A DNA stretch of 64,000 nt from Octopus bimaculoides (GCF_001194135.2 NC_069001.1:39733940-39797939); one strand, 5' to 3'; positions 2,871-64,000 are shown, counted from the first letter of the stretch. Translations and numbers: made by a program. The notes: a model not told the origin generated them from the letters alone.

Positions 2871-42458
<39,588 letters not shown>

Positions 42459-42968
42459 GTAAGTAATAAAAAAAAAACTACATCCAGAATTTTTTATTAT
42501 TTTGTTATTAAAGAGTTGTCTTCTTTTTTAAATTTCAAAAGTGATAAATTATGTCCTGATAAAATATAAACAAGCCTTTTAGGACAGTTTTAATGAGTTC
42601 CTTGTTGTGAATCTAATGAGAGAACCGTTTCTAGTTTTATTTGCTTTATTTCAGAATTATATAAACTGTTGATTTTGAAAATTAAAATACATTTTTGTTC
42701 TGGATATTTGTGCTATATTCAACGTAGTATATTTCTTTTACACACATATGTACATGCAAACATGCATGTGTGTGTATTGTACATGTTCTGTTTTGAGTTT
42801 TTTCTTTTCAATTTCATATCTTGTTTTGTACATTTCTTTAAAAGCAAACTCTTAAGACTTTAGCTGTTCCCTTACCATTGTTCTTGTTAATTGTCCCCTT
42901 ATCTCATTAGTGGCCCTTTTACTTTGCTAGTTGACACACACCTGTCAAAGTGTTGTACTTTTTTGCAG

Positions 42969-42983
42969 GAGAAAAAAGAAGAG
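42969..42983 (+). CDS. Cav2: Candidate 15-nt microexon after the IQ motif (EKKEE)
   Basis: tactttttttgcag|GAGAAAAAAGAAGAG|gtcagt; phase 0-0. Confidence 0.6.
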
Positions 42984-43724
42984 GTCAGTACTTCTTAGCA
43001 TGAAAGTGTGCAAAACTTTACTTTCACTGATATTGCACATCTTCAAATGTTCTTGTCTTCAAAGTGTTCCGATACAGAGCATACCAGTTCTAAAGCTAAG
43101 GAATAGACCTAGCACTGCCTAGATTGACAACAGACATCAACTCAACCAGATGCTATTTCAGTTAAATTAGCCAATTAAAAATGCATAAAGAAAAACTGTT
43201 AAATTTCTAAATAGTTCTACTATGAAGTGTTTAAAAGTGTCATCATACATTTGTAATCTGATCACTGATGCAGTTTTACTGTATTAAGGTTTCAACTATG
43301 AGTGACACCTTTCGCTTCATATAAAACACTTACCTTATTTACAAATTATAGTAAAAATATGTGAAGATAATTAGAACAAAATAGAAATTCTACCTAGGGA
43401 CATGTTTTGTAGGAAAGCCAAATTATTAGGTCTGTATTTAATGTCATGAGCCTTGATATTGCAATTGATTAAAATTACATCCATGGTGAGGAAAATGACT
43501 AATTAACCTAATGAATGACTCTTGCTAATAAATGCAGGGGAGACAACCGTGATATACTAAATTTTTAAAATTAATATACAAATGATCTAATAATGATAAA
43601 AATGATAATTATAAATCAATTATTAAAATAAAACAATTTCATTCTGCAATCAAGATGCATCTCATCTCATCACACTAGGAATATTTGTCCTCCACTAGCA
43701 TTGCTGGAACCTCAGTTTTGTGAT

Positions 43725-43890
43725 GTGTGTCTCTGCCAACAAATAATATCTGGTGTATTGTGGTGTCCAGTACAATATTAGTGGTCAGCAAAGCTGATTC
43801 TAAGTTGAGCAACAATTTTAGAGCTAGGTGGAATGTGTCCATAAATCTCCATTTTGGTCATGGGCTCAAGCCACGAGAAGTCTTGTGTAC
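43725..43890 (-). mobile_element. RTE-like LINE fragment
   Basis: Minus strand reads MEIYGHIPPSSKIVAQLRISFADH*, resembling the RTE C-terminal LYG...RLRFAGH region. Confidence 0.55.
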
Positions 43891-44477
43891 GATTTTATCA
43901 CTTGTCTTACCAAGATTTTATCCTAAATCTCAGATTATAATTCTGCTTACCACTATGTTAGTAAGTTAGCTTGTGTGTTGGGTAGTTTTTTGCAACTTAA
44001 TGTTTTGAGTTCAAATCCTGCCGAGGCCAGTGTTGCTTTCCATCTTTCTGGAGTTGATAAAATAAAGTACCAGTTGAGCAATGAGGTTGATGTAAATTAT
44101 CGAACCCTCTCTACTGAAATTTGAGCAAAAATACTGGCCTTTGGGTGGTTTTCTGCTAGTTTATTTAGTTGGTAAATTAATGATAATCAGTGATCAATAA
44201 TTGATTTGGTTATAATCTGTGGGTATTATCAATAATATACATCAACCAGAATATTTAATCTTATAATCTGAAGAAGTTCAGGGTGTTGGATGTGAGTATG
44301 AAGACACTGAGTCTTGAATACGTTAATTGGTTTGTCATAAATGATTTTATTGCTATGATAATGTCATTAATTAATTATAATAAAGATTATGATGATGATA
44401 TCGACAATAATTCTTTAACTAAATATCACACCAATTCAGTATTGAAGCTGTTTCCTTGCCTAGAGGTTAATGAGGGA

Positions 44478-44522
<45 letters not shown>

Positions 44523-44581
44523 CAATACGGAGCAAATAATTCACGACAAGAAACAATTCGTAAAAAAAGTCAGTGAAATAG

Positions 44582-44677
44582 GGGTTAGGGTTAGGGAGCA
44601 ATGTGGGTCTGTCGATACATATTTTGATTAAGGGTTAGGGTTAGGGAACAATGTGGGTCTGTCGATATTTTGATTAA
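44582..44677. repeat. Tandem duplication of a unit of about 50 bp beginning with telomere-like GGGTTAGGGTTAGGG
   Basis: Two copies: gggttagggttaggga(g/a)caatgtgggtctgtcgata...ttttgattaa. Confidence 0.85.
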
Positions 44678-44853
44678 GGCTTTGCATAGTTTGAAGTAAA
44701 TTCAGGAAGTAACAAACTTTTATTATTTTAATATATTTTTATATTTCTGAATATTGCCTTCATGTAGAATATATTCAAATCAGGATTCAAAGAACTTATG
44801 TTTAGCTAGTCTCATATTCTAGAAATACCTATGTTACATGGCTAGCAGTGTCA

Positions 44854-44890
<37 letters not shown>

Positions 44891-47800
44891 CTGTCAGTCT
44901 ACTTTTGCTGATAAATTCACTTATTTACAACATTAACATATTTAATGAAGTGAACCAAAAAGAATTTTTAACCATACAAATTGCTCCTGGAATGAGGAGG
45001 AAAGCCATTTGCAGCAATGACAGTTCTTGTTAAGAAAGGCAATGGAGAAAAATAGGAAATATAAATTGATTAAAAATGAAATAGAATTATGTAGTGGAGA
45101 AGTGAACTTGATCCTCAGTGATGTAGGATAACTTCAGGCATGTTTTGCTCTAATTAGACCTTATCAGCAAACTCTGCCTGATTCGAACTTATGAGATTCT
45201 AGACTTTGAGAGAATCAAGATTTTGTGTGAAAATAATTTTTTGATTTAGCTAATTAAAATGACATTAACAATGGTAATTTACACTTCTCTACAAATATAC
45301 ATTAATTAAAACTGTGATTTAAATACTTTAAACTTAATTTACTGTTAATTTTTCCCATATCTATATTTGACGTTCTCACACTGAACCTAACAATATTCTA
45401 CAATAATAGATTGTGTTAAACTATTTCAAATTTATTCCATCTGGTATGCTCTCTCTCTCTCTTTTATTTTTACTTTACATTTTTCCATCTTTATATTATT
45501 TATATTATTTTTACCTAATTTGTTCTTTAATTACGAGTGCATGTTTTCACCCAAGTCCTCACTGTTTATAGGTTAAACATAAGTCTTTCTCTGCTTTCGT
45601 ATCAGTATAGTCTGTGAAATTTGTTTGCCTGTAAATTGCTCAAGCTCTGCTTGGCACCAGTTGACTGCCATTGTTCAAAGGCTGCAGCACACCAGTTCAC
45701 AGTAAACACCACATTCAGTTGTTTATGTTATTAGAATAATAACTAAAAATCTTCTATTTTTAATTTGTTTTTAATTATTTCCACATTGCTTTTCTTGTTG
45801 AAATCTGTCACTGAAACCACTTCAAATAGCCATGTTAGATAGACAGCAACACAGCAATTTTTAAAATATTTTATTTAATTCTAGCTACTTAAATAATATT
45901 TTTCTTTCCTTTTTCTTTCCTTTTTCTTTCTTTCTTTCTTCTTAATGCAGTAAATGTGCAATTAAAACAACACTTTCATTGCTTGTTAAAGTTGAGCTTC
46001 ACATTTTGATGTGTAAATGTTGATTTTTTTTTTATTCCTTTGGTCTATTTTGATTTAAAATTTCCACCAATAATCAATCACGCTTTTTTGTTTGGTAATA
46101 ACAACTTACCAAAAAGATTGTCTTTGTGTATCTTATTTTGTATTCACTTCAATGTTTCTTTACAATTATGTTTCATATGAATACAAAGGAAAGCTTTCAT
46201 CTAATTATAACAATTTTGTGTGCATATGTGTGTTCATATATATACTTGTATGTATCTACATACCTGTCTCTTTATCTATTTCTTGTATATGTTTATGTGT
46301 GTATGTATATGAGTGCATACATATACATACTATGTGTATACACACACTCCATACATACATACTGATTCATTCATGTAAGTTTTTATAATAGAATATTTCA
46401 AATATGGCTATCTATCTTAATTAAAATATTGTATATCATATCTTTAGTGTTCAAAAAGTTTTCAATATTTAAATTTTAAAAGACTTAATCAGTATTTTGA
46501 TAGTTTCGAGAATAGAATGATTATATTTCTTCCTTAAACATTAATATTTTAGATATATCTTCAGTGTGCCTAGAATCAATGTTAACTAATGGTAAAATCT
46601 GTAATAAAACTAAATAAACTGTAAGGGTCTGCAAGAGCAGTAATGGTGATCAAAGCCAAAATAGTGGATGTCAAAACCTTTGGTTTCTGTGAAAAAAATC
46701 TCTTGACAATGAGCCAAGTTACTGACATTCAGAAATCCTCTTGGATTTTGGAAATAATGTTTATTTGAATTTTGTTTCAAGCACACAATCATGTATGGAA
46801 TAAATTTTGAAAATGACAAAATCTTTTTTAATTGCTGTTTTCAAGAATTTGCACACTTTATTTTCTTAAATATGTATTGTAACATTTTTATAGATTAAAT
46901 ATATCTATTATGATACATATTGATATATACTTCTCTAAGACTGTATATATATATATATATGGTCATTAACAGAAAAAACATGGGAATTCAATGATGTTCA
47001 AAATTTAACCAAATCTGTATTTTTTACTGATAATTTGAAAATGTATGCAATTTTGTAAATTAGAATGTGTGTTTGTGTGTGTGTAGGAAGAGGAAGGGAT
47101 ACATTTAATAATATTGTACACAAAGACAGACAGAGAGAAAGAGAGAGGAATAAGTGGATATGTTGTGATAGGATGGTTGAAATGGTAACTCATTGCAGAT
47201 GGCTCCTGTTCAAGACCTGTAATTAAGACTGGTCTCTTACCAATGAGGTTAACACTAATTATTAATTTACATTCCATGGTTCAGTGGTTAACACATCAGA
47301 TAACCATCAATGTATAGATTGAAATTTAAAGACCTATATATTCATATTATACATACATGCACACTTGCACAAATGTTAACCACAGATGAGAGAGAGTATG
47401 GGTGTATATGCATATATGTGTGAGTATGTGAGCTTGATGCAACCTTGTGGCTTGCTGGATCCTGTTAAACTGTTCAATCCATGGTAAATGGATATTAAAT
47501 GATGATAAATATATGCATGTATACAAACATAGTATCACCTAACAGTCTGGATGTTTTGCGTTCTTGTCCCATTTTGTATTATATATATATATATATATAT
47601 ATATACCAAAACATACATACAACCATACATGAGATGTACTTGTGACACAAAATAAGTCGAATTTCATAAATGAAATATTAAATACACATTTTAGGTGCAT
47701 TATATTTTATACACACAAGTTAAAGTGTGTTTGTATGTTAGTTCAAACTTTGGTTATTTCTTTTTACAAATGAATATTTTATTTCTTACTACACAAATTA

Positions 47801-48199
47801 TTCCTCTGTCATATAAAAGTCTGTCTTTGAAATCTTCTGACTGGTTGTTCTTATTAGTCTACGATATTATCTAACATTCACTTGTATTTTCTATTGGAAT
47901 TCTGAGTTTATATTCCTGATAAGTTGAATGAACTTAGGGCATAAGTTATAGAAAGTTGACTTCTATTTATATACAGTAATGAATATTCTGTAATATATAC
48001 ACATAACCACACAAACAATGAAGTACACATACCTATGGCTTTGTGCATTTGAATAATATAATCAGTAGTAAACATTTAAATTTGATGTTTTAAATATTTT
48101 CCTTATAATCATATTTAACTGCAACTAATTACCATTCATATTTGTTTTATTATTTTAACTTTTAATTTTTATTTCTTTATGATTTTCTTCTCCTTTTAA

Positions 48200-49023
48200 A
48201 TTATTTCACATCTGGTGATAGTCCAGGCTCTTGCATGACAAGAGAACACTATGCATCTGGTGAAACTTCCTTGAAATCCCCAAGATAGAATTTGAGTATG
48301 TTTCAACAAGTCAATATTAGCTGAGGTATTTTTTTTAAATTTAAGATTAAGATATGACAGCAAATAGAATGGAGTTTCTATATAATACAGGGACGATAAC
48401 ACTTTGATCCCTTGAATACCTGTATCTATTCTAATACTGCCTCTGAGATACTGGAGGGCTTTGTTTCTTAATTTCCAAGTTTGGTGTTTTCCTCATGCTA
48501 ATCATGAAATGGCTTATTGTTGAAGACATTAGCACAACATACAATATTTCCTCTAAACATCCCTCTTTTATGAGGATAAACTCTATATTTTGGTAGTACA
48601 TGTCAGCTCCTTTCATTTTATGTTTGTCTGCACTATATTTTACATTAACAGTGTTACTGGTGCTGCTGTTGATTTTGTTAAATAATTTACAGAATTTAAG
48701 GCTGTTCATGAAATGTTTTGTAATACCAGTTTTTACAGCATTATTGTATGGTGGGTTGTTCCATATAACATTTCTCTTCTTGATGTTTTTATGGTTTGGT
48801 GAGTGCAACTGCAAGTGTTTGTTTCTTCTTGACATCAGCAACCTAGTAGTGCCTCCCTATCATACACTAAACCTTTGTTGAAGCTGAATTTATTAAAGTC
48901 CAATGCGTTTATCCTCTTGCAGATGTTTAGTGATAAATGCTTGATGACATTTAGATTGAATGTGGCTGTACAATAGGGGGCTATTTGATTTCTTGAAGGG
49001 TCACATAAATGCAGCACCCTCAT
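48200..49023 (-). mobile_element. Decayed Penelope-like element (RT thumb, linker, GIY-YIG region)
   Basis: ORFs 48835-49023 (NICKRINALDFNKFSFNK...EAL) and 48431-48841 (RNVIWNNPPYNNAVKT), matching the PLE WFNPPY motif. Confidence 0.8.
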
Positions 49024-50207
49024 TTTCCTTCAAAGTCACTTGCCTCTGACAGAGCATATGTGCAATGAACACTTTTTCCGTATTCTGTCATTGCAACTGC
49101 CTCCACATAAACCGATCTTCCCTGAAACCCATGCACAGACAATTAACTACTTGCTGAGAGAGATCAGTGGCTACATTTCACAACAAGAAACCCAATATTG
49201 GTGTTAACCCTCTGGACATTATTTCATTAGGTTCGGTTCTGATCTTGCAGAAGCCTCAGCTTTATCTCTTGGCACTTGGCTTCCTTTGATGTGATCCACT
49301 CCATTGTAAGCATTTTGTGTAAAGATAACTTCTTCCCCAAACTGCCTTGAAGAACAGTCATGACCTCTGGTTGCTCACCTAAACAAAACAGATTCTCATC
49401 TCTAACTGCTTCTGCTTCCCAGAACTAGCTAGACGTGTATTAATCCCTTCCAGGCTGACTTAGATGTCTCTCCCCATGTTGCAATCCTTTCCTTTATTGA
49501 ACAGCCATATAATTATATGGCTTCAATCACAATTTTCTTACAGACATCAGTTTGGTGGACTATTATCAACCACTTCATTATTACCAGTTTTTGTAGTTCT
49601 TGTGTTTTGTAGTCACAGTTTAAGGCCATGCCTGAGCATGTTCTATAAATATTTATATCTATAAATATATTCTAGTCTACAGAATAGCATTGACTTTTAC
49701 AGGGTTTTTTTCTTCCTTTTTCTTGTGTGAATGATCTCTGATGCATGGTTGGGAACCCAATTTGGTTTTTTATTGCTTTTTTTAATGTTTAATATAACTG
49801 ATGAGTGAACTAAGCTGCTTGATCTTAATTTTGTAAAGGATTAGCATATTGAGAAAAAATAGACAGGAAAGATCTTGTGTGTGTGTGTTTGTGTGTCTGT
49901 GTGTGTGCTTGTGTGTGTGTGTGTGTGTGTGAATTTAACTGCTTGATTATTCTCCAATAGATTACAACTTTAACTTTCACCTTTTCTGGAACTTCATATA
50001 ATGAACCAATTCCACAACTTCCTATATTCCTTTACATTTCATTTTAGGATCTAACATGAAGTAGTGGCTTTAAATCATTACCTGCAAAAGCAGGAATTAG
50101 TAAAAATGTTAGTTCCATTTGAAGGATACCTACTAAATATATACGGGATGTGTGTGTTTATACATAAATGTATGTATATGTACATATTTATATGTCTGTG
50201 TCAATGT

Positions 50208-50268
<61 letters not shown>

Positions 50269-51240
50269 CACACACATATAAGTATATGTAAGTATAAATG
50301 TTAGGTTTATGAGTGTGATCATAATCCAAAACCATTGAAAGTGCTTTGTTCTGGCTCAGAACAGATATGGGTTTAGGGTCAGTCTGAAGGTAACACTCTT
50401 CTTCTCAGTCTTGATCTGTGTTCATATACACGTATATAAACATATGTCTTTCTGTATATTTATGTTTAGATAGATTGATAGACAGACAGATAAATGTATA
50501 CATATAACGTATGTATTTAGATATATATCGGTATAAATATCTAGTTATATTTGTGAATATATTATATTGTTTATATGTATATCTACTTGTATGTGTATAT
50601 TTTAGGTATAAATATATACATACATACATATATATATATAAAATTATTTTTATATTATTACAATATTATAGTGTCATAACAACTAATTAATGTGTCTGAT
50701 TGGATTCATGCCAATAACCTTCTAGAATTGGAGAGGTAAATAAATAACCATCATATATGGTTGAGTGGAAAAGTTTGGTTTGGTCTCTCTGCTGTTGGTG
50801 GCCTGAAAAAGTCTTCTGTTTTATGGGTCTCAGAGTGGTTGTAGAAATCCAGAATAACATTGATAGATAAAAGAATGCAGCCAAAAGAACTGGTTAATAG
50901 AACCAAACAAATGAGGTTGTCTCTTAAGGCTGACAGATTTGTGTTTTGGATTTGTCCCGTTGAGCCAATAACCTGAAGTTCACCATTCATCTGACAAAAG
51001 TCCACTCTACTTTTAGGTGATGTGGGGGTAAAGAGACAGGTGTAGGGAAAGATGCAGAATGGAGAGAGATGGAGGGAGTCTTTTTTTTTTCTGAAGATGT
51101 GGACATGTATTTGCATTAATGTGTGTAAGTGTGTATATATGTGTTGTGTGTGTGGTGGGGAGAATGTTAACTTCTCATTTATGGCAAGGGAAAAGCCAGC
51201 TGTTATACTTTTTGGGGTCTGTCTGACCAGCTGGTTAATA

Positions 51241-51892
51241 TGAACTTGAGTTCATGAGGGCAGGAAGAAATAACTCCACTTTTAAAGCTCAGTAGGCCCT
51301 TGGGTAGAGAGTGTTCTTTAATATGATCTTTTGGTTTCTGTTAACAGTCAGCACATCTTACTGCTGCTGAAGTAAGGTTTGTGCATGTGCAGTCTTCACC
51401 TGATGTTATATTGTGCAGTATTTTCTGCCTATATTTCCATTCATGTCATGATATTGCATCTCTCTTGAATATGACACAAAGATTTGTGGGTGTCTAACTT
51501 GGACTTGAAGGAGCCTTCCATGGCACCTGTGTATTTTTGTACATTTGTCACTCTGTTGGGATTCTTTGAGACTGTTTCTGCTTCACATGTGATGGTTTCT
51601 GTGTTACATTAACCATTTAGTGGGCTTGTGGTGTTACATCTGAACGAACAGTTTATCTCTATGTTAGATTTGGGCTTATTTGCTAAAATTTTCTTTAAGC
51701 TAGGTGCACAGGTAAAAGAGATCCTCAAAGTATCTTATTGAAATTTTTCCTGTATGTATTTGTTGTGGAAAATACTTATCTGATAATCCAAGGAAGATCC
51801 TATCTACATCTTTTAACATTCAGGCAAAATGGGGATATAAACCAGATAGCCTTATGGTGGCAGTTTTTCATGTTGGGGTTTAGAGTTAGCTC
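51241..51892 (-). mobile_element. Decayed Penelope-like element (linker and GIY-YIG endonuclease C-terminus)
   Basis: Frameshifted pieces KAIWFISPFCLNVK, IFLGLSDKYFP, DTLRISFTCAPSLKKIL, KYTGAMEGSFKSKLDTHKS, LLSFKSGVISSCPHELKF. Confidence 0.75.
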
Positions 51893-52554
51893 TATTTATT
51901 TTATTTATCTTTTATTCTTATCATTAAACTAGTTAAATACATTCCTTATAAAATTTCTGCTCTTTCTTGGCCATTTTACAGTATTATTATGTAACACTGA
52001 AAGAAGTGTTTTAATTCAGTTCACTGTGCATTTTAATCACAAGTTATCTCTAAAATTGGTCGTTATAATGATTTAGATTAAATAATCTCTAATATAATAG
52101 ATTTACCCACTTTTGATGTATCATTACAAAACTTTACATCTTTTTATATTCTGTAAGCAGAGTAGTTTCAGGTTCAAATATTAGTTGAGTGGAACAATTT
52201 GTTTGTACTAATTAGCTATTAATTAGTTATTAATTCATGACACATGAAGTTAGTTATTTTATTCCTATTTTCATATTTTGACTGGAAATGATTCTATATC
52301 TATTTTAGTGTGACTGTATGTATATATGTATGACCATATACATGAATATAATTATATATATCACTATGTAATTATATAAATGAATATGCGTGTGTGTGTG
52401 TATATATGCATGTATAGTTATATCGTTATATGCACATGGTTACTGATATATATATATATGTGTGTACATATATATGTATATAATGTATATATATATATAT
52501 ATATGTAATGTCTGTGTGTATATATATCTATATATACATATCTGTATGTGTATA

Positions 52555-52628
<74 letters not shown>

Positions 52629-52910
52629 CATATCTATAGGTGTATATATATATTATTATATATATATAAATATGTATATCCATATATATGTATAAGACCA
52701 ATCTTTAGATTATAAAGTTATATGTATATTTATATAAGTACCTTGTACATTTTTTTGTTTATGTGTATATGTGAATATATATATTATATATACATGCACA
52801 CACAGTCCATGGCCTTTGGAGAGTAATCTACAGCTGTGATGTCGAAGAGCTTTTCGTTTCTTGTTGAAATTTTGAATGTATCTGATTTGTTCAACTTTTC
52901 TGATTTCAAG

Positions 52911-53054
52911 TTGTTCTGGGAGGATGATATTAAGGAGTATCGTGATGACGATGATTATAAAGAATATCACGATGACGAAGAGTATCACGAGGATTATAAA
53001 GATTATCAGGAGTATCAAGAGGATTATAAAGATTATGATGAGGACTATAATCAG
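52911..53054 (+). CDS. Candidate 144-nt cassette exon encoding a D/E/Y-rich repeat (LFWEDDIKEYRDDDDYKEYHDDEEYHEDYKDYQEYQEDYKDYDEDYNQ)
   Basis: About 60 nt free of AG, then ttttctgatttcaag|; 48 open codons; CAG|gtatga donor; phase 0-0. Confidence 0.55.
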
Positions 53055-53812
53055 GTATGACTGAATACACTCCAATTACTCTGGCACACCTAAACTGCAT
53101 CTGGAATTTAAGTTACACCAGTCTGCCTCCATCCTCTTCAACTCTATTATTATCCGAATTTATGCTGTCACAAGTTATCCATATTTATGCACCTACCTCA
53201 TTTTAAATTGCTTGTGACCCAAGTAGTTGAAAACACTTTTTCTTCAACCAATTTTTGTCACCAGTGTAAGTGCATTGAAAACGTAGTCCATTTTATCATA
53301 AACCAGTCGAAAAATCTTTGTAGTCCTTGTCCTTTATTTCTCATTCATTGTAGGTTTGTTTTTGTTTGTTTTTTTTTGTTTTTTTCATCCATTTTGCAAG
53401 TATTGCAGTGATTTGTGCTAGTTTCCAAAATATAGTTTTTGTCCCTTTTGCTGTAGCTCTTACAATCAATGAGGAATTTTATCTTATTTTTTCTTCTTTT
53501 ATTCTGCATGTTGTGGTGGAATTATTTTTCTATAGTTTTTATCATTTACTTATCTCTTCTAGCTAGACCAAATCAAGAAATATGTTCTAACCATATTGTT
53601 TTCGTAAAGTTTAGTTAAAGCTATCAACTTGTTAACATTTCAAATCTGGTTCTAAAAAGAAACTGATAATTAAAAACCCAACATGTTTTCATTAAACTTG
53701 TAATCTATTTTCTCTGTGTTTACAACCCTTTCTTATGTTGTGCACGGATCAACTATGCATGTTGCTTCATCATCATGGTAAGAAAAATCAACTCGTCATT
53801 CAAGTAAGCGAG

Positions 53813-53844
<32 letters not shown>

Positions 53845-54114
53845 CCCCCAGTGAATATTCTAATTAATAAATGCTCATTATGAGAACTCTTGATTACTTT
53901 TTGAATGTTTGAAGTCCATTTCCCTTTGAGCTTTTGTGCACATCGAACATTTTCTCAGCACATCAACTATTTTGGTCCGCCACTTCTACATTTGATTATA
54001 ATCACTTTTAATAATATTGCTTACAAAATATTTCTATATTTATAAAGTCACATCACTTATTCAACTCTTCACATATACTCCACATATATTTACACGCATG
54101 TGTAGCTGGCTGGG

Positions 54115-54166
<52 letters not shown>

Positions 54167-54309
54167 TATGCATACACACACATAGACATTTGTACACACA
54201 CACACAAATATATACACACGTTCATCTACTTGTCTATAGTATAAGATATTTTTGTAATAAAATCAAATCACATCCTTATATCTGAATGTGTGTGTGTGTG
54301 TGAGTATGT

Positions 54310-54366
<57 letters not shown>

Positions 54367-55359: not shown

Positions 55360-55391
<32 letters not shown>

Positions 55392-55676
55392 CATTATTAT
55401 TATTATTCTGCAATGATAATTGATAATTAATTATCCTTGCAGATTAACAGAAATGCCTTATTATATTTCTTTCGACTCTTTACATTTTGAGTTCAAATTC
55501 TGCCAATGTCAGTTTTGCCTTTCATCCATTCGAGAATAAAGGGAAGTACAAATCAAATTCTAGAATCGATTTGAGTAACCCCTAACTCCAGAATTGTTGG
55601 TCCTGTGCCTAAAATTAGAAACTGTTATTACTACTACTGCTACTACTTATTGTTGTTTTTCATTTTCAACGGCAAG

Positions 55677-55691
55677 CCCAGTATAGTGGAG
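55677..55691 (+). CDS. Possible 15-nt microexon (PSIVE)
   Basis: gtttttcattttcaacggcaag|CCCAGTATAGTGGAG|gtaagc; phase 0-0. Confidence 0.3.
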
Positions 55692-58070
55692 GTAAGCTCT
55701 TGGTCATCTGAATTTCTAATTACACCTTTTGAGCCATTTTTTCTTTACACTGAGCAATTTTATTTAAATTAAGATAACTTTTTGTGTTTTAAGAATAATT
55801 TAAAGTATTTTTAATAATTTAAATAACTTATTAATAAATGATAAAAAAGTAAGAATTTAACATAATGCAATAAATATCAAAATGTTTATATATATTTACA
55901 CTTAGAATATTTTATTTGTTGTTAAAATTCTTTTGCTTCAGAGAATTTAAAATAGCAAATATAAAGTAATCTGTTTTAATATAAGAGAGAGAAGAAATTA
56001 TGCCTTATTTGGAATTGTGATATAATGTTCTTTATCAAATTAATTTTCATAACTATTGTACTTATTTCAGTAGATAATACACTAAACATTAACTTTTATT
56101 TATGACATGGAGTCAGCATCTAAACAATTTGTTCATTGAATATTTTCTACTTTCAAAGTTTATATTGTCTTAGTGATTCTGTCATCACTACTTTGGCATG
56201 CCTGGCAAAGTCTATGTTTTCCTAAGGAGTTCCAATAACATTGAAACATGTTTGGATTGTCTCCTATACTTACCAGTTCATTTCAAATGATAATAATCAT
56301 TAACTATGGTGGTTCCTCACTGCACCATTATTTCTGGGCTTAATGCTTAATTAACACTTGACTGACCATATTTCTATTGAAATACAATCTCTAGATGTTT
56401 CTGTAATGTTGAAAAATAATCTAGAATTTGAATGGGTTTAAGAAAATAAACAACTTAATTGGCAGTGTTCCCTCCCCATCTCTAATTCTGCCTTTATCTT
56501 CCAATGGAGATAATTCTGATCTTATTGGATTTTCTACCATGGTTACTAAATTCCAGTGAATTTACATCCTGGTTGGGTAAAGGAAAAATCTCAGGTAGAC
56601 TAACAGAAGTCAACTTTTATTCAAACTGAGTCCACAGATTCTGTATTATATTATTCTAAAAGACATTATTGCATACAGATATGGGTTAGTGACTATGTAG
56701 TTCACAATTACATACATCTGGGTTCAATTCCACTTTACAGTGGCCCCAGGTCAACCAAAGATTGTGAGTGAAATTTGGTTGATGGCAACTAGGCACAAGT
56801 TGTGTGTCAGTCATTGATGTAAACATTGGCAAAAGCTAGTGCTGTTTGGATGAAGTCCTTTCCAATATTTATTCTACACCAACTTATGTACATTCTCATT
56901 TACTACTGCCTCTAAAAATACAGTGAACGAATGATTGAATCCATTGGAAACCTCTAATTAACAACCTGTAATTCTTTTACTAATTTAATATACAAAATAA
57001 ATAACAGGTGGGGTATTTAATTGTTTTAGGTATGTTAGAAAATTGCATTTGTTTTAAATTCAAGTTATATAATTTTATTATTCCACTTTACCGCAAAATA
57101 CATTAAAACTCTCTCACTCTAAATATTTAGTTTGTAAAGTTTTCAATCATTGGAGTAATAATAATAGTAATAATGATTTTTTAAATAATATTCCTTGATA
57201 ATTTGTTCAATTAAAATTGAGATAGACTGTCATTTTATGTATCAATTATTTAGATCTTAGATTAATTGTAAAATTAAAAAAGGATTCAATCCAAGAACTC
57301 ATTTAGATTATGTAAAATGACAAAAATAAACAATAGAATTAGAGTGAAAAATATTTTGCCCATCTTCATCTAAAATCTATGCAAATGAAAATAAATTAGA
57401 AATGATTTTAAAAATTATTTTTATACCAACTAATTATCTCTTCTAATTTCAGCTTTATTAATATCCATTTTTTTTAATTACATCATTTTCTGTTGAAATA
57501 TATTTTGTTTATAATGAACTTAGATTCGTGTAAATTTCACTTCATAATAAACTTGTTGCTATTTTATTCCTCTATAGTGTAATGCCAGTCTTTTCCCATA
57601 TTAATTTAACTAATTAATTTTGTACATAATGAATGCACATTTTATTATTTCTATCATAATTACTATTTTGTTAATTATATAAATAGTTAGAATCTAGCCT
57701 GTTTTCCATAATGAATCATTTTAAAATAATCAAGACATAACCTTTAAACATTTTCCAAATAATTTTAGAATTTAAAAAAAGGATTTTGCTCATAGTTCAA
57801 ATGTTATTGACTTAAAAAGATACCTCAGAATAAAGATTTTTCATTAATTAATCTACAAGACAATGTGTTTAACATATAACCAATAAATTGGTGAGAAAAT
57901 TTCTTGCAATTTATTAGATATGAATAATTAAAGAACAAAGAAAATTTTTAGAATTTAGCTTTGTAATTACTTAATAATCTTTGGCTCATTCTATTAAGTA
58001 TTTCAGCATGTACTATACTAATGTTTTCTGTGTAGCTGGTGTCCTCAAGTATTTTTCAGTACCTGTTAGA

Positions 58071-58110
58071 GTAGGCTGATGAGATTTAATAAAATTGAAA
58101 CATGTCCTCT
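58071..58110 (+). ncRNA. Minimal hammerhead motif, sense strand, degraded stem I
   Basis: CUGAUGA-GAUUU AAUA AAAUU-GAAA-CAUGUC; 5-bp stem II, palindromic ACAUGU stem III, GUC triplet. Confidence 0.5.
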
Positions 58111-58396
58111 GTTAACAACAAACTGCCAAAAATCAGACTTCCTTCCTACTGCAATCATTTCTTTCTTCATCAAAATTAATCATCAACATAATGATTTTTC
58201 TCTTCATTAACAATTTAATTAATTAAAATTTGTCTCATTTTATAAACTAGGCTAGTAATTACTTTACAATTTATAACTATTTGATCTTTATAAACATTCT
58301 CAAAGTTTTCACTTTGATCATTTTTCCTTTAATTGAAATATTTAGGAAAAATTTCATTCAAAGGAAACTCTAATTCCACTGTTTATACTAGTTTAT

Positions 58397-58437
<41 letters not shown>

Positions 58438-59102
58438 ATATGAAGAATAAGATTTATTTATGTAACATGTTTTCAAAGAATTACTTTTGATATTAATTAA
58501 TCTTATTAGTAAATTGGCAGAATTAATAGAATGATGGACAGAATGTTTTGCTGTAATTATTTAGTTTCTAAGTTCAAACATCATCAAGTTAATTTTGTCC
58601 TTTATCCATCCAAGCTTGATGAAACAAACTACCAGTTATATAGTGGGGGATCAACCTAGCCTTCTTCAAACCTGTGTCTTTATGCCTAAGTGAGAAATGA
58701 ATATATCAATCTTGATGGTGGATTGGCAGAAGAGTGATGGATGAAATGCCTTGTGGTATTCAGTTGCCTACCTAGAGGCTTTATGTTCATTTCTCACCAA
58801 GGTCACCTTTACCTTTTATACATCTACAGTAGATACTATAAGTACAGGTCATGTATAAGGGTCAGTCTAATTTTCTTATTTTTGTCCCCTTCATTTCAGG
58901 TCTTCTGATATCTATTTTTCTTGTTAATATGAAAATCCAACATTATTATGGTTTTACTCATCATCTTGATAATCCTCTCAATTTGTAACTCTAACATTGT
59001 TAACGCCAAAACTATGATTACTTTTTCCATTTCTTAATTGGAGGCAAACTTTCTAACTGTATTGTATGGATGTCGTTTGTACTTCTTGTGTTCCTTAATT
59101 AG

Positions 59103-59201
59103 ATCGAGACTCAGGAGTTTGAACCCTGCACCAAGTATCATAAGATTCCAGTTCATTCTCCTTGCCTTAGATTAAATGGACAACAGTTTCGCTTTCAGCA
59201 G
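59103..59201 (+). CDS. Candidate 99-nt cassette exon (IETQEFEPCTKYHKIPVHSPCLRLNGQQFRFQQ)
   Basis: Branch-like ttctaac at 59051-59057, AG-free pyrimidine tract, ttccttaattag|, 33 open codons, CAG|gtatgg; phase 0-0. Confidence 0.6.
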
Positions 59202-59671
59202 GTATGGATGTGACACAATTTCTTCAAGGAATTTCAGAATTTCATTTAGATTATTGTCCGTGACATTTCAATAAGAATGTTCTTTAATATTATCCTTTGT
59301 GTTCTGAGTTCAAATCCCATCCATGATGACAGGACTTTCCAAAGTCTTCATGCCTAGCCATAGAACTTTCCAAAGTCTACATCCTAAACATTAATGTTTC
59401 CAAACACTCCTCAACTCACAGACTAATATTTCCGAGAAACAGTAAAAACTTGCACATTATTGTATAGCAAAAGATTTGGACACCAAATCTGTAACTCATG
59501 CAGTAAGTTATAGATTTGTAGTTGAAATCCCATCAGTGACCCAGAATGCTAGAGATTTGTGGTTCAATCCTACTGCACTTTCCTCTCTCAAAATTGGTTC
59601 TTATAATGTCTAATATCATTTGTATTAATATCAGCAATTTTAATACGTAAATGTATTAGTTTGTTTTATTT

Positions 59672-59707
<36 letters not shown>

Positions 59708-59971
59708 GAAACTGATGCAGATTCCCCAAATCCAATCTATTGTGGCACAGTGAAGATTTGTAAAACATTCCAAAAATGTGAATAGATATACACACTTGGA
59801 TGTATGCATCAACAATTCAAGCAACACATATTTATAAACACTAGGATCTCTCATAACTCAAAAAGTCTTCTAGCTTTGTTAGATACAAGCTTGAACTCTC
59901 TCCAGGAGAACCTACATAAAACTCAAAGAAAACTCATACATGCATATACTTAAATAAATGAGTGTGTATAG

Positions 59972-60014
<43 letters not shown>

Positions 60015-63000
60015 TTGGGCTGCAAATTCATTTCACAATTTATATGGTTGTTCAATGAAACAAACTTGCAGCCTGTAAGATATTTATCCCTATAAAGTAT
60101 GTATGTTTGTACATATATATTGGAATACATATGTGTAGCTGTTTGTGTGTACATTTAATATTAATGTATATATATTTTTGTGTGTATGTGTATATAAATG
60201 TTTGTATGTAATTTTATGCAATTTGTTTCCATGTTAATTGAAGTGTTATAATTAGGTAGAAAAACAGTAGGATTCTACTTTGATTTAAAAAACTCAGAAT
60301 CCAACTTTAATTAACACATATAGGATCCTACCTTAATTAACAGCCATAAGATTTGGCATTAATTGATGTGTTTGTCTTGATTTGAGAGTTTTATAGTTTA
60401 TGATTCTAAAACAGCACATTATATCAGGAAGTAAAGATGGAAACTGAAAACCGTCTTGGAAATATCAGGTGAGACTTGAGGTTCTCACTTTTAATGTTGA
60501 CATTTCTTTCTTCTCTAAGTTTACAGTATAGAATACTTATTCAAGACATTCTTTCAGTTTTAAAAGACTGTAAACATACAGTTTGAAGGACTGAGTCATT
60601 CTAGGAGAGAGAGAGGGAGGAGGGATATTTTTTATTATGGTGATTGTTTCTGTTGCAATTGTGAATTGCTGAAGTACAACTCTATACAAATAGGTTTTGA
60701 GCTGCTTATGATTTTAGCTACTCTTGATATATGAAGAATAAAGGAAACCTGTGATAAAATTGTTGATATCAGAAAACCTTTGATGAAATATTTAGCTCAG
60801 TTCAAAGAATGCCAAAGGATTGAGTTACAGAGCCAACTAATTCATGTGAAAATGTTTAAAATGTTAAGCCATTTCTTTTTTACATAATATCAAGATTGAT
60901 GAATCGGAAATCAATGTAGATGAAATTTTAGAAGTGGTTAACCTTGCTAACAGCAATACACTTACTTGTGATGGCAATATTTTTTCTAAAGAGCAATATC
61001 TTTGATAATGCAAGGATTTGAACTCATAACATGTGGGTCAATACCAGCTAAATTACTCACCAATGTACTCATACATATTGATCTTTTATTAAAACAAATT
61101 TAAGTATGCTATACATTATTCTAAAGTTAAACAGCAATTCATTTATTCACATCAAATATAGCTTACACTCTTCTGCTTAATATGAAATTTGATTTGTTTT
61201 CATTACCTTTAGCTTTTAGTTATATATATATCTATAATTTACACAATTTCATTTTTATTTGTGTGTGTATATATATATATACATACATACACACAAACAC
61301 ACACATGTATACTTACACAGTTATTGAAATATTTCATGTAAACTCACAAACTCATTGAAGCATAAATACATATTCATATGATTTTGATCTTTATTATTTT
61401 TGTAAGGCTTGTAACACAAAAACAGATATTTCAAATGTTGAATACATAAATATTAAAACCATGATAGAAATTTTTTAAATGTTTCTTCATATTCCAAGTA
61501 AACTCCACTGGTCACATTCTTTCCTTTTAAATTCAATAACATTCAGTGACATAAATGTATAGTTTGTCAATGTTGCTAGGTTTATATACACATAACAGTT
61601 GTGTATAATACATATAGTACGTTTGATACACAGACATTTCCTAGAGATTGTTGTCTATTATAGGTTACATTGTTTGTCATTAGTACCTGGGAACAGCGTT
61701 GTTGAAAATCCCCAGGCCAGCTCTGCATTAAGCCACAGACATGTTAGACAAAGGTAGTTAATTTAATGAAAGCTCTGGCTATTGTTTCTGTTAACTGTGA
61801 AATCTGTTGTTCTTGGATTTGTCCTCATTCTGAAGCAGAGAAAAAGTTTACTGCATGACAGCTGGAGTAATGAATGACAATTATAGTTACTGAACAGATT
61901 ATAATTAATAATTTACTTAAGTTCAATTATATCTAAGTAAATGATGTTCAAAAGTGAAATTAAATTAAATTTCCAGGTCATATTTCTTGTGAAACATAGG
62001 GTTTGATTTTTAATTAGTTTGAAAATATTCTATTTTATGTTTTATTTCATCAACCTTACTGTTGGTGGTGGGGATAGAAAAGTAACATGGAATATGAAAT
62101 CAGCAGGTAAAAAAACCTACTACTGAGCACCACTTGAAATTCTTTGTTGCTCTTCCGAGTCTGATTCATCTTACTAGAAATGTTGACATTTTATTGTTTG
62201 TCATCAGGAAGGTCTCACAATCACCACTTAACCCTCAATACTTTTACTTGGTGCTGTGAGGTGGGAAGCACTCTACCATAGAACTGACAAAGGTTTAGTT
62301 GGTTTGCCAGAAAAGTCCCTGTCACTGAGGAAAACAGGGAACTTACTTGAAAGCCACAATAGAAATCTTTAAAAATTCTATTTTAAAATTATAGAAAAAG
62401 TAATTACATTTATTGTGAAAATGTAATTATAAATTTCTCATTTATTATAATAATTAAAAAAAGTAAACATAAACTGACCTTTTAATAATCTTAGTGGAAA
62501 CCTTTTTCTCTGGGGCGTTTGTATATAGAACAACATAGCCATCTATGTGTTCAGGTGGTCTTCTAGATATCCATCTGTTGTTAGCCATATAAAAGAAGTC
62601 TTCAGTGTCTAATTTTTATAGATATTTAGGGGACAATTTAACAACATTGCAATTAATATAATATTATGTAATCAGCTGAAATGTATTTTCTCATGTAAAA
62701 TCCATACTTCTTCCAAAAGGATGCGAGTTCACCACCTCAAGGTTAGGCTAATGTATCCAGAAGGAGACTTACCTCTCAAATGTTTCAAGTGACAGAAACC
62801 AAATATAAGCTCTGCTCCTATATCACACATGGAATTTGATGGAATTTTCCTATAAAGCATCTTTGTTGGGAATAGAATTATAAGAGACTAACACATTCAC
62901 TATTTTATAGCATGATACCAAAGTTATATAACTAAAATTTTGAGATTTTTTTTCATTTTTGTTTTTCCCTCATAATCACTTCCACTTCCCAGGCTGTGAT

Positions 63001-63239
63001 ATTTTCTCAGTGATAAATATATTTTATATGATAAATATAGGTTTTGTGTGATAAATATGTGTGATAAATATATTTGTTTCACATGGTTGTATTTATGGTT
63101 CATATTATATGTGAGCCGTATCTATTTGGCATATGATATACTTATATCTCACGTGGTGGGCATTTATCACATTCGTTGAGTTTGTGTTTCATATATTATC
63201 TCTTACTATAGTTTTGTAAATCCTGTGGTATATCTGAAT

Positions 63240-63425
63240 ATCATGTGTGCCTATATACCATTTGGTGTGTCTCTATATTATGTGGAGTGTCTATAAACCA
63301 CGTCAAGTGTCTATATACCATGCAGAGTGTCTATATACCATGTGGTATGCTTATATATCATGTAAAGTATCTGTATATAATGTAAAGTGTCTATATAACA
63401 TGTGGAGTGTCTCTATATCATGTGA
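63240..63425. repeat. Degenerate minisatellite, unit of about 20 bp (atgtggagtgtctatatacc)
   Basis: About nine degenerate copies. Confidence 0.75.
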
Positions 63426-63905
63426 TAGATCAGTGTAACATTCTTTAAGACTCTTGCTTCAAGTTTTAACTCCAAATCCTCTCGAGTGAAAATTTCCCTA
63501 ATTACATCCAACTTCATTTTAAACTTTTGTTTTTTGTTCCCTTCACCTTCCCCCCTCTTCTCTTCAACTATTCACTTACATTTAAGTTTCTATGTATGAA
63601 TGGGTTCATATATATATACAAATATACATTTATACATTTATATACGTACACACACGTACACAAATTATCTGGTAAGTCAGCTTTTGATTTTAAAAATTGA
63701 TTGCTTGTAAATTACAAACAATTGTTATAATTAATTCTACACCAAATTTTGATGTATATATTACCATGCTGTTTATACTTTTTTTGTTTATTCTTTAGTT
63801 TGTTTTAGCCATCATGACTCACGCCCTGCTGGAGTATCACTTTGAATCATTTTCAAAATATGTCTTTCAGAGACTTTTTTTCTTTCTTTAAATATATTCA
63901 TATAA

Positions 63906-63943
<38 letters not shown>

Positions 63944-63969
63944 ATTTATCTATCACTGTATATGTAACT

Positions 63970-64000
<31 letters not shown>

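What the first reader, a model, noticed from the sequence alone, without database searches (positions are those of the whole stretch)
42459..64000. Modular post-IQ cassette array: over 21 kb with only phase-0-entry candidate exons and no recognisable constitutive exon
Seen: after the IQ exon (phase 0) the best splice-flanked open segments are 15 nt (42969), 144 nt (52911), 15 nt (55677) and 99 nt (59103), plus weaker 24-nt (51348) and 41-nt (60428) candidates. All start in phase 0, and all but the last are 3n long. Inference: a combinatorial cassette system diversifying the proximal C-terminus of the presynaptic channel between the calmodulin site and the distal scaffold-binding tail. Some candidates may be chance.
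Basis: inference. Interest (0 to 1): 0.72.

Follow-up and report, generated by a model that had tools for sequence, protein, structure and literature searches.

The report
Octopus calcium-channel post-IQ cassette exons
Three of the six short segments flagged after the calmodulin-binding (IQ) exon of this octopus presynaptic calcium-channel gene are real, optionally included coding exons, but they are already present in a cloned squid cDNA, in public octopus gene models and in a 2018 paper, so the finding is correct but not new.

Summary
The window is the Octopus bimaculoides CaV2 (cacophony/CACNA1A-type) alpha-1 gene, from the II-III linker to the proximal C-terminus. The 15-nt microexon EKKEE (42969-42983) and the 144-nt acidic, tyrosine-rich exon (52911-53054) are in octopus models and the cloned squid cDNA. 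The 99-nt exon (59103-59201) is in the squid cDNA (20/33 residues identical, same length) and one O. bimaculoides model.

All three are 3n, phase 0 and AG/GT-flanked. Inclusion varies: a squid-type RNA contig and an O. vulgaris model skip all of them, and other models carry subsets.

Nothing retrieved supports the candidates at 51348, 55677 and 60428. The next constitutive exon (RPPSFF...) and a 24-nt LQYSDSEE segment lie beyond the window.

Dunn et al. 2018 already described this splice site in molluscs, naming the octopus "LFWED...NQRP" insert.

Verdict: observation partly confirmed, interpretation supported, already known. The function of the cassettes is untested.

The parts
42349..42458 (+). 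IQ exon of CaV2 alpha-1 (E)[36 protein letters not shown]. It is constitutive, ends in phase 0 and has the donor ATG|gtaagt.
   Evidence: 100% identical to the octopus proteins. The junction with the upstream exon was resolved as 41870/42349. It aligns to the CaV1.2 preIQ-IQ/calmodulin structures 3OXQ and 3G43 up to ...RAYKASQ.
42969..42983 (+). 15-nt microexon encoding EKKEE. It is a cassette, phase 0-0, with context ttttttgcag|GAGAAAAAAGAAGAG|gtcagt.
   Evidence: Present in P0121, P0241, P0242, P0245 and the squid cDNA P0123. Absent from P0122, P0250 and P0251. It has the best combined splice-site score in the region. Equivalents in other molluscs are EEKDE, EEKEE, EVLDE and VEDKEE.
52911..53054 (+). 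144-nt acidic, tyrosine-rich cassette exon LFWEDDIKEYRDDDDYKEYHDDEEYHEDYKDYQEYQEDYKDYDEDYNQ. It has 23 D/E and 10 Y in 48 residues, is phase 0-0, and contains in-frame internal tandem repeats.
   Evidence: 100% identical to the O. sinensis and O. bimaculoides models and 36/48 identical, without gaps, to the squid cDNA. Expanded in Argonauta. Tandem repeats of period 21/27/30/39. Named as the octopus 'Large insert (LFWED...NQRP)' in PMC5818475.
52675..52910 (+). Intron sequence upstream of the acidic exon that is conserved in a sister Octopus species.
   Evidence: Logan contigs L002-L005 are 94.5% identical to the window overall. They show only 4 substitutions in 52675-53094, against 40 substitutions plus indels in 53095-54110.
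59103..59201 (+). 99-nt cassette exon IETQEFEPCTKYHKIPVHSPCLRLNGQQFRFQQ, phase 0-0, with context ccttaattag|ATC...CAG|gtatgg.
   Evidence: Identical in XP_052831401. Homologous to squid cDNA VETLEIESRNKYHSTPLHSPCIAINGQQFQFQQ: 20/33 identical, same length, tblastn E = 1e-8.
59202..59209 (+). 8-nt extension of the 99-nt exon, using the alternative donor GGAT|gtgaca. Only the RefSeq model XP_052831401 uses it. Doubtful.
   Evidence: This donor is needed to reproduce ...FRFQQVWI of P0241. Its donor score is -1.2, against 6.0 for the canonical donor.
60737..60845 (+). 109-nt exon (I)IKETCDKIVDIRKPLMKYLAQFKECQRIELQSQLIH, found only in XP_052831401. It has a weak acceptor (tatatgaag) and is in frame only together with the 8-nt extension. 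It is either an annotation artefact or a rare form.
   Evidence: It has no counterpart in the squid, O. sinensis or O. vulgaris proteins. Joined to the canonical 99-nt donor it shifts the frame into stop codons.
51348..51371 (+). Not supported.
   Evidence: The peptide is absent from all retrieved proteins. Splice scores are ordinary: acceptor 0.3, donor 3.8.
55677..55691 (+). Not supported.
   Evidence: The peptide is absent from all retrieved proteins. The acceptor is poor, with score -5.4. The overlapping ORF is not on record in sister-species contigs.
60428..60468 (+). It is not 3n and is not supported.
   Evidence: The peptide is absent from all retrieved proteins. It would shift the reading frame. 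The donor is strong (8.7) but the acceptor is weak (-1.4).

Best explanation
The region 42459-64000 is the part of the Octopus bimaculoides CaV2 alpha-1 gene that lies between the IQ exon and the next constitutive C-terminal exon (RPPSFFQRIIG..., beyond the window).

It contains three genuine cassette exons of 15, 144 and 99 nt, separated by introns of 0.5, 9.9 and 6.0 kb. A 24-nt coding segment (LQYSDSEE) lies downstream of the window. Every cassette starts and ends in phase 0 and is a multiple of three, so each can be included or skipped independently without changing the frame.

Inclusion inserts up to about 94 residues. The insert begins 8 residues after the last residue that aligns to the calmodulin-binding IQ helix. 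It consists of a charged pentapeptide, a 48-residue acidic/tyrosine low-complexity segment, and a 33-residue segment with the conserved motif KYH..P.HSPC...NGQQF.FQQ.

Shown: the exons exist, they are conserved between octopus and squid, and they appear in different combinations in cDNA, RNA contigs and gene models.

Inferred: inclusion is regulated by neuron type. The microexon's UGC just before its 3' splice site fits the Srrm/eMIC microexon code.

Inferred further: the insert tunes calmodulin-dependent regulation, or spaces or charges the linker to the distal scaffold-binding tail. The only functional test at the equivalent site, Aplysia with and without eCT, found no difference.
For: - Gene identity: all window exons from the II-III linker to IQ are 97-100% identical to the octopus CaV2 proteins. 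Hits carry Pfam Ion_trans, GPHH and Ca_chan_IQ.
- Species: the window encodes RMDEIEKDL and contains the exact 99-nt and 109-nt exons of XP_052831401. It also has an N gap where the IIIS4 exon is missing from the O. bimaculoides models.
- Cassette exons appear in proteins and cDNA.
- The squid-octopus alignment has no gaps. Identity per exon is 84% (IQ), 100% (microexon), 75% (acidic), 61% (99-nt) and 84% (next exon).
- All-skipped RNA: Logan contig L001 is a spliced transcript, 96% identical to H. bleekeri over the conserved part, that joins ...NSLKT directly to RQPSFF.
- All exons are 3n, phase 0, with AG/GT.
- A sister-species contig shows the acidic exon and its flanks more conserved than the downstream intron.
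- Molluscan context: the microexon and lineage-specific inserts occur at the same junction, included or skipped among isoforms.
- Literature: Dunn et al. 2018.
- UGC motif near the 3' splice site of eMIC-dependent exons: PMC8797185. The sequence here is ttttttgcag.
Against: - Most isoform patterns are computational gene models, not sequenced transcripts.
- I could not inspect RNA-seq junction counts for O. bimaculoides, so inclusion levels and tissue specificity are unknown.
- The acidic-only pattern (the A0A0L8G525 set) could simply reflect a microexon missed by the 2015 annotation.
- In octopus, the 99-nt exon appears only in a model that uses a non-canonical path (107 + 109 nt).
- No functional difference was seen with or without the large insert in Aplysia.
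- Rbfox-type TGCATG motifs are not enriched: 54 observed against 42 +/- 7 expected.
- The AlphaFold model is uninformative, with pLDDT 39.
Confidence: 0.85

Rival explanations
1. The whole 21.5 kb is one long intron, and all the listed segments are chance AG...GT open stretches.
For: The region contains 834 such phase-0, 3n segments by chance. Generic splice-site scores do not separate the acidic and 99-nt exons from the background. Three of the six candidates have no support.
Against: Three segments are reproduced exactly in octopus proteins and are conserved, with identical lengths, in a cloned squid cDNA. The acidic exon and its flanks are conserved in a sister species.
Confidence: 0.03
2. 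The three exons are real but essentially constitutive in octopus neurons. The skipped forms would then be annotation artefacts or minor species.
For: Five of the seven octopus models examined include at least the microexon and the acidic exon. The O. vulgaris 'X9' protein is a predicted model.
Against: A spliced RNA contig from a decapodiform skips all cassettes, whereas the cloned cDNA of a 96%-identical squid includes them. The equivalent Aplysia insert was cloned both ways. Isoforms with and without the microexon are annotated in Haliotis and other molluscs.
Confidence: 0.12
3. Some transcripts end inside this region. Read-through or alternative polyadenylation after a cassette exon would give a channel truncated just after IQ and lacking the distal tail.
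For: Read-through of the donors meets stop codons almost at once: VSTS* after EKKEE, V* after the acidic exon, VWM* after the 99-nt exon. The Argonauta model ends ...DYQQV, exactly such a read-through. Mya and Saccostrea models end shortly after the microexon. The region has 26 AATAAA hexamers.
Against: I found no transcript with a poly(A) tail or 3' UTR in this region. Contigs L002-L005 break at microsatellites on both sides and look like genomic or pre-mRNA sequence. AATAAA is expected often in DNA that is about 70% A+T. The truncated models may be annotation artefacts.
Confidence: 0.1
4. The RefSeq path of XP_052831401 is a true additional isoform. It extends the 99-nt exon by 8 nt and adds the 109-nt exon 60737-60845, so the array would have a fourth in-window exon.
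For: The path is in frame as a pair (216 nt) and reproduces the deposited protein exactly.
Against: The donor is weak (GAT|gtgaca, score -1.2) and so is the acceptor (tatatgaag, -4.5). There is no homologue in squid, O. sinensis or O. vulgaris. The model lacks the conserved LQYSDSEE segment that follows in squid and O. sinensis. With the canonical donor the exon is out of frame.
Confidence: 0.2

Closest known systems
Molluscan CaV2 alpha-1 C-terminal splice site 'eCT' (Dunn et al. 2018, Sci Rep 8:3263, PMC5818475)
   Same: Same gene family and same position, directly after the IQ domain and before RPPS(L/F)F. It combines a small charged microexon with a large optional insert. [quoted passage not shown]
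   Different: The paper treats it as a single site with one insert. It does not resolve the octopus/squid array into separate 15, 144, 99 and 24-nt units. It does not mention the 99-nt exon or its conservation between squid and octopus. The Aplysia insert sequence is unrelated.
Heterololigo (Loligo) bleekeri optic-lobe CaV2 cDNA, BAA13136.2 / UniProt P91744
   Same: The cloned cDNA contains EKKEE, the 48-residue acidic segment, the 33-residue segment and LQYSDSEE in the same order and with the same lengths as the octopus exons.
   Different: It is a different order of cephalopods. A cDNA gives no gene structure, and it represents only the all-included form.
Vertebrate CaV1/CaV2 proximal C-terminal alternative splicing (CACNA1A/B e37a/b, CACNA1A e43/44 and e47, CACNA1D e42A/43S). 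Recalled from general knowledge, not tested here.
   Same: Alternative splicing close to the EF-hand/IQ module of high-voltage-activated channels. It is used to tune calmodulin- and kinase-dependent regulation and coupling to the distal tail.
   Different: The vertebrate events are mutually exclusive pairs, or truncating or frame-shifting events. They are not a chain of in-frame acidic cassettes, and there is no sequence homology to the octopus cassettes. PDB homology stops at the IQ helix.
Neuronal microexon programme (Srrm3/4, invertebrate Srrm234 eMIC domain; Torres-Mendez et al. 2022, PMC8797185)
   Same: The EKKEE exon is 15 nt, a multiple of three, sits in a neuronal ion-channel gene, and has UGC immediately upstream of its 3' splice-site AG.
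   Different: Dependence on Srrm/eMIC and neural specificity were not tested. Its splice sites are strong rather than weak, and the AG-free zone upstream is only about 18 nt.

Membership tests
CaV2 (non-L-type, cacophony/CACNA1A-like) alpha-1 subunit gene | Encodes four-domain channel segments followed by the EF-hand/GPHH, pre-IQ and IQ modules. Its closest relatives are annotated CaV2 channels. | tested here: met
   The window exons are 97-100% identical to octopus 'voltage-dependent calcium channel type A subunit alpha-1'. Hits carry PF00520, PF16905 and PF08763.
CaV2 (non-L-type, cacophony/CACNA1A-like) alpha-1 subunit gene | Distal C-terminus ending in the acidic D/E-x-WC PDZ ligand. | tested here: inconclusive
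   The orthologous proteins end ...DEDDDWC, but that exon lies outside the window.
Cassette (skipped) exon | Canonical AG/GT boundaries at the positions used in mature mRNA or protein. | tested here: met
   for 42969-42983, 52911-53054 and 59103-59201.
Cassette (skipped) exon | Length a multiple of three with equal entry and exit phase, so that skipping keeps the frame. | tested here: met
   Lengths are 15, 144 and 99 nt, all phase 0-0.
Cassette (skipped) exon | Both included and skipped forms are observed for the same gene. | tested here: met
   Included in P0123 (cDNA), P0121, P0241 and P0245. Skipped in P0251 (RNA contig L001), P0122 and, for the microexon, P0250. Within O. bimaculoides itself the evidence comes only from predicted models.
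Cassette (skipped) exon | Tissue- or cell-specific regulation of inclusion. | not testable with these tools
   No access to RNA-seq junction counts.
Mutually exclusive exon set | Exactly one member of the set is present per transcript, and the members are paralogous. | tested here: not met
   All cassettes co-occur in the squid cDNA and none occur in L001. The cassettes are unrelated in sequence.
Neuronal microexon (Srrm/eMIC-dependent) | Length of 27 nt or less and a multiple of three. | tested here: met
   15 nt.
Neuronal microexon (Srrm/eMIC-dependent) | UGC motif close to the 3' splice site. | tested here: met
   The sequence is ...acttttttgcag|GAG. The motif is described in PMC8797185. 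One instance cannot show enrichment.
Neuronal microexon (Srrm/eMIC-dependent) | Inclusion is neural-specific and lost when Srrm234/eMIC is removed. | not testable with these tools
   Needs expression and perturbation data.
Molluscan CaV2 'eCT' splice site | Optional sequence inserted between the IQ exon and the RPPS(L/F)F exon. | tested here: met
   Junctions in octopus, squid and 20 other lophotrochozoan proteins. Table 1 of PMC5818475.

The most novel reading that the evidence does not exclude
The 144-nt acidic/tyrosine exon and the 99-nt exon would be coleoid-specific additions to an ancient molluscan microexon site. Placed 8 residues after the IQ helix, they would form a lineage-specific regulatory module of the presynaptic channel. 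Possible roles are a low-affinity Ca2+/cation-binding or tyrosine-kinase-targeted segment that changes calmodulin-dependent gating or nanodomain coupling. The module would be used combinatorially in different cephalopod neuron classes.
Probability: 0.12. Interest if true: 0.5.

Novelty: already known. Interest (0 to 1): 0.22.

Why it matters
The result shows that a reading of raw sequence alone recovered three real cassette exons, including a 15-nt microexon, in 21 kb of AT-rich intron.

Biologically it adds little that is new. The exons are in a cloned squid cDNA and in public octopus models, and the splice site was described for molluscs in 2018.

What is useful is the resolved gene structure:
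- There are four separate in-frame units rather than one 'large insert'.
- The 99-nt exon has kept its length and a motif since squids and octopuses diverged.
- The microexon is shared across Mollusca.
- The current O. bimaculoides RefSeq model probably mis-splices this region. It lacks the LQYSDSEE segment, and it lacks the IIIS4 exon because of an assembly gap.

If the cassettes prove to be used in a cell-specific way, they would offer a handle on how cephalopods tune presynaptic Ca2+ channels from a single CaV2 gene.

Tried and rejected
1. A 181-aa query (EF-hand to IQ) returned only proteins of 316 aa or less and no cephalopods. The tool appears to favour proteins near the query's length. 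Tripling a 707-aa concatenate of window exons then retrieved full-length cephalopod channels.
2. tblastn with the bivalve, insect and unnamed short proteins from the first search (P0001, P0005, P0012) found nothing downstream of IQ, because the cassettes are cephalopod-specific.
3. A profile of the IQ-to-RPPSFF region, searched against the word-indexed database, gave only 3 hits and none were cephalopod.
4. Generic splice-site weight matrices, with frequencies recalled from general knowledge, do not discriminate in this AT-rich genome. Verified sites score from -1.9 to 9. I used them only descriptively.
5. The Rbfox motif TGCATG is not enriched: 54 observed against 42 +/- 6.7 expected.
6. Rfam found no RNA family in the window.
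7. Genomic DNA of O. sinensis and Argonauta could not be fetched. There was no record for P0121, and the Argonauta gene range is too long.
8. Four exact-ORF look-ups, meant as handles on sister-species contigs around 42969, 55677 and 59103, found nothing on record. The conservation of the unsupported candidates therefore could not be tested.
9. An AlphaFold2 model of IQ plus cassettes had mean pLDDT 39 from a 4-sequence alignment. It is uninformative and compatible with disorder.
10. The PDB has no match to any cassette.
11. The original squid cloning paper is not in the searchable library.
12. I considered and rejected mutually exclusive splicing, because the cassettes co-occur, and a gene on the minus strand, because the ORFs there are low-complexity or microsatellite-derived.

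Full report
**What the window is.** The + strand carries a CaV2-type voltage-gated calcium-channel alpha-1 gene. Open segments encode domain III S1 onward, domain IV, the EF-hand region and the IQ exon. The IQ exon is 42349-42458. It translates as (E)[36 protein letters not shown] and ends after a complete codon, followed by gtaagt.

A first protein search returned only short fragments, the best being a Mya arenaria fragment at 78% identity. A padded query then retrieved full-length cephalopod channels:
- Octopus sinensis X2 (XP_036367714)
- Octopus vulgaris CAI9738066
- the cloned Heterololigo bleekeri cDNA product (BAA13136.2 / P91744)

tblastn shows the window exons are 97-100% identical to the octopus proteins.

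The species is Octopus bimaculoides, for three reasons. The window encodes RMDEIEKDL, as in that species. It contains exactly the exons peculiar to XP_052831401. It also has an N gap at 12603-12955 where the domain-III S4 exon is missing from the O. bimaculoides models.

**Check of the observation.** Each has an AG before and a GT after, and each is open in phase 0. Five are multiples of three. Comparison with proteins settles which are real.
- O. sinensis X1/X2 read ...NSLKM|EKKEE|LFWEDD...DYNQ|LQYSDSEE|RPPSFF...
- O. bimaculoides XP_014784009 reads ...|EKKEE|LFWEDD...DYNQ|RPPSFF.
- XP_052831401 adds IETQEFEPCTKYHKIPVHSPCLRLNGQQFRFQQ, which is exactly window 59103-59201.
- The squid cDNA reads ...NSLKT|EKKEE|LFWEDD...DYNQ|VETLEIESRNKYHSTPLHSPCIAINGQQFQFQQ|LQYSDSEE|RPPSIF.

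So 42969-42983, 52911-53054 and 59103-59201 are exons. The squid and octopus sequences align without a single gap. Identity is 84% for the IQ exon, 100% for the microexon, 75% for the acidic exon, 61% for the 99-nt exon and 84% for the next constitutive exon.

The peptides of the other three candidates (51348, 55677, 60428) occur in none of the 249 proteins retrieved up to that point. The region holds 834 chance segments of the same formal type, so recovering three true exons in five 3n picks is far beyond chance. Splice-site scores alone would not have done it. Only the microexon has outstanding sites.

**What is not in the window.** Neither LQYSDSEE nor RPPSFFQRIIG... is encoded anywhere in the window, and 42459-64000 has no assembly gap. 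The next constitutive exon therefore lies beyond base 64000. I could not tell whether LQYSDSEE is a separate 24-nt exon or an upstream extension of the RPPSFF exon. The statement 'no recognisable constitutive exon' is right, but it only means that the window ends inside this intron-rich stretch.

XP_052831401 continues ...FRFQQ VWI IKETCDK...QLIH RPPSFF. This requires two things: a donor 8 nt downstream of the canonical one (GGAT|gtgaca, 59209), and a 109-nt exon at 60737-60845 with a weak acceptor (tatatgaag).
- The two pieces are in frame only together.
- With the canonical, conserved donor the 109-nt exon runs into stop codons.
- The exon has no counterpart in squid, O. sinensis or O. vulgaris.
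- The model lacks the conserved LQYSDSEE segment.

I regard this path as a probable gene-model artefact, with about a 20% chance that it is real.

**Evidence that the exons are alternative.** Six patterns occur at this junction:
- None included: O. vulgaris CAI9738066, and Logan contig L001.
- Acidic exon only: O. bimaculoides A0A0L8G525, A0A0L8G5M3 and A0A0L8G6E5.
- Microexon plus acidic exon.
- Microexon, acidic exon and LQYSDSEE.
- All four units.
- The XP_052831401 path.

L001 is the strongest piece of evidence. It is a 2970-nt spliced RNA contig from run SRR8281683, 96% identical to H. bleekeri across the EF-hand/IQ part, and it joins ...NSLKT directly to RQPSFF. The cloned H. bleekeri cDNA has all four units. 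Most other patterns are predicted models, and the acidic-only form may simply be a missed microexon.

**Conservation at the DNA level.** One ORF spans 72 nt of intron plus the acidic exon (P0270). It is found unchanged in four Logan contigs (L002-L005). These are 94.5% identical to window 52671-54137, so they come from a sister Octopus species. The stretch 52675-53094 has only 4 substitutions, and the one inside the exon is synonymous. The stretch 53095-54110 has 40 substitutions plus indels. Exon and flanks are thus under more constraint than the downstream intron, as is usual for regulated exons. Similar look-ups around the other candidates found nothing on record, so their conservation remains untested.

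**Anatomy of the cassettes.**
- The microexon is ttttttgcag|GAGAAAAAAGAAGAG|gtcagt. It has the best splice sites in the region and a UGC directly before the AG. That feature is enriched at Srrm/eMIC-dependent neuronal microexons (PMC8797185).
- The acidic exon has 23 D/E and 10 Y in 48 residues. It is built from in-frame tandem repeats of period 21-39 nt. It is expanded with poly-D in Argonauta.
- The 99-nt exon keeps the motif KYH..P.HSPC...NGQQF.FQQ between squid and octopus.
- Homology to solved CaV1.2 preIQ-IQ/calmodulin complexes (3OXQ, 3G43) ends at ...RAYKASQ, 8 residues before the junction. Nothing in the PDB matches the cassettes.
- An AlphaFold model was of too low confidence to use.

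**Wider context.** In other molluscs the same junction carries a charged microexon:
- EEKDE in Gigantopelta, Pomacea and Littorina
- EEKEE in Haliotis asinina
- EVLDE/EVLEE in Mercenaria and Ruditapes
- VEDKEE in oysters
- EENKEE in Mytilus

The microexon is skipped in other isoforms or species (Haliotis rufescens X9, Babylonia, Lymnaea). Unrelated long inserts occur in Gigantopelta X4, Haliotis cracherodii X10 and Ruditapes X8. The microexon therefore looks ancient in Mollusca. Among the sequences examined, the acidic and 99-nt exons have homologues only in coleoids. In the representative search, a few non-cephalopod proteins carry unrelated acidic runs after IQ.

**Comparison with what is known.** Dunn et al. 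2018 (PMC5818475) cloned Aplysia CaV2 with and without a large C-terminal cassette ('eCT') located after IQ. They found no functional difference. [quoted passage not shown] Together with the squid cDNA and the RefSeq/UniProt models, this makes the feature already known. What this analysis adds is the resolved exon structure in the genome, the squid-octopus conservation of the 99-nt exon, and the critique of the current RefSeq model.

**Mechanism.**
- Shown: there are three in-frame, independently skippable exons between IQ and the distal tail, and they are used in different combinations.
- Inferred, moderate confidence: splicing is regulated by neuron type, with the microexon under the Srrm/eMIC programme.
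- Inferred, low confidence: the insert alters calmodulin-dependent regulation, or the geometry or charge of the linker to the scaffold-binding tail (...DEDDDWC).
- A rival is that some transcripts end here, giving channels truncated after IQ. Hints for this are stop codons 1-4 codons past each donor and truncated Argonauta, Mya and Saccostrea models. No 3'-end evidence was found.

**Verdict.** The feature is already known. Interest is low to moderate.

Noticed in passing
window 17113-17223 and ~21236-21418: A pair of mutually exclusive exons for domain IV S1-S2. One encodes [37 protein letters not shown] and the other [45 protein letters not shown]. Different octopus isoforms use one or the other. 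Table 1 of PMC5818475 already lists the pair. The Argonauta model P0243 wrongly contains both in tandem.
   Followed up: partly
window 12603-12955: A 353-base N gap sits where the domain III S4 voltage-sensor exon ([33 protein letters not shown] in O. sinensis) should be. The O. bimaculoides models XP_052831401 and XP_014784009 lack this segment, which is an assembly-gap artefact and not biology.
   Followed up: partly
window 5782 / 5794: Tandem alternative 3' splice sites 12 nt apart (cttacag|TATTTCTTTCAG|TCATAC) add or omit ISFS in the II-III linker, giving [10 protein letters not shown] or YHTSRL in different isoforms.
   Followed up: partly
window 7214-7240: A 27-nt cassette exon in the II-III linker (ttcatag|ATGCAAACAGAATCAATACTCAACCAG|gtaatg) encodes (N)ANRINTQP(G). 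It is present in P0121 and P0241 and skipped in P0122 and P0394.
   Followed up: partly
window 52446-52694 and 54118-54169: Long (AT)n microsatellites flank the acidic exon on both sides. The sister-species Logan contigs break at both of them. The window as a whole is rich in (TA)n and (CA)n arrays.
   Followed up: no
window 63247-63424: A minisatellite of about 9 copies of a 20-nt unit (GTGTCTATATACCATGTGGA), with a 60-nt higher-order period, lies in the intron.
   Followed up: no
beyond the window (proteins P0121, P0242, P0122, P0244): Further optional C-terminal segments lie downstream of the RPPSFF exon and are present or absent among octopus isoforms. Examples are NQANYNPNQQRGGYVNRSFSGVDETQLYENPKYK, SIEMKDVGRR...TKLNKDE, PSEKQDFSWGLRPEHAAH...PPQ and YFYEDYYYDD. 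The whole C-terminus is therefore heavily alternatively spliced.
   Followed up: no
tool behaviour: the search for homologous proteins returned only proteins up to about 1.75 times the query length: the longest was 316 aa for a 181-aa query. Tripling the query retrieved full-length channels. This matters for anyone who reads an absence of hits from that tool as meaningful.
   Followed up: yes
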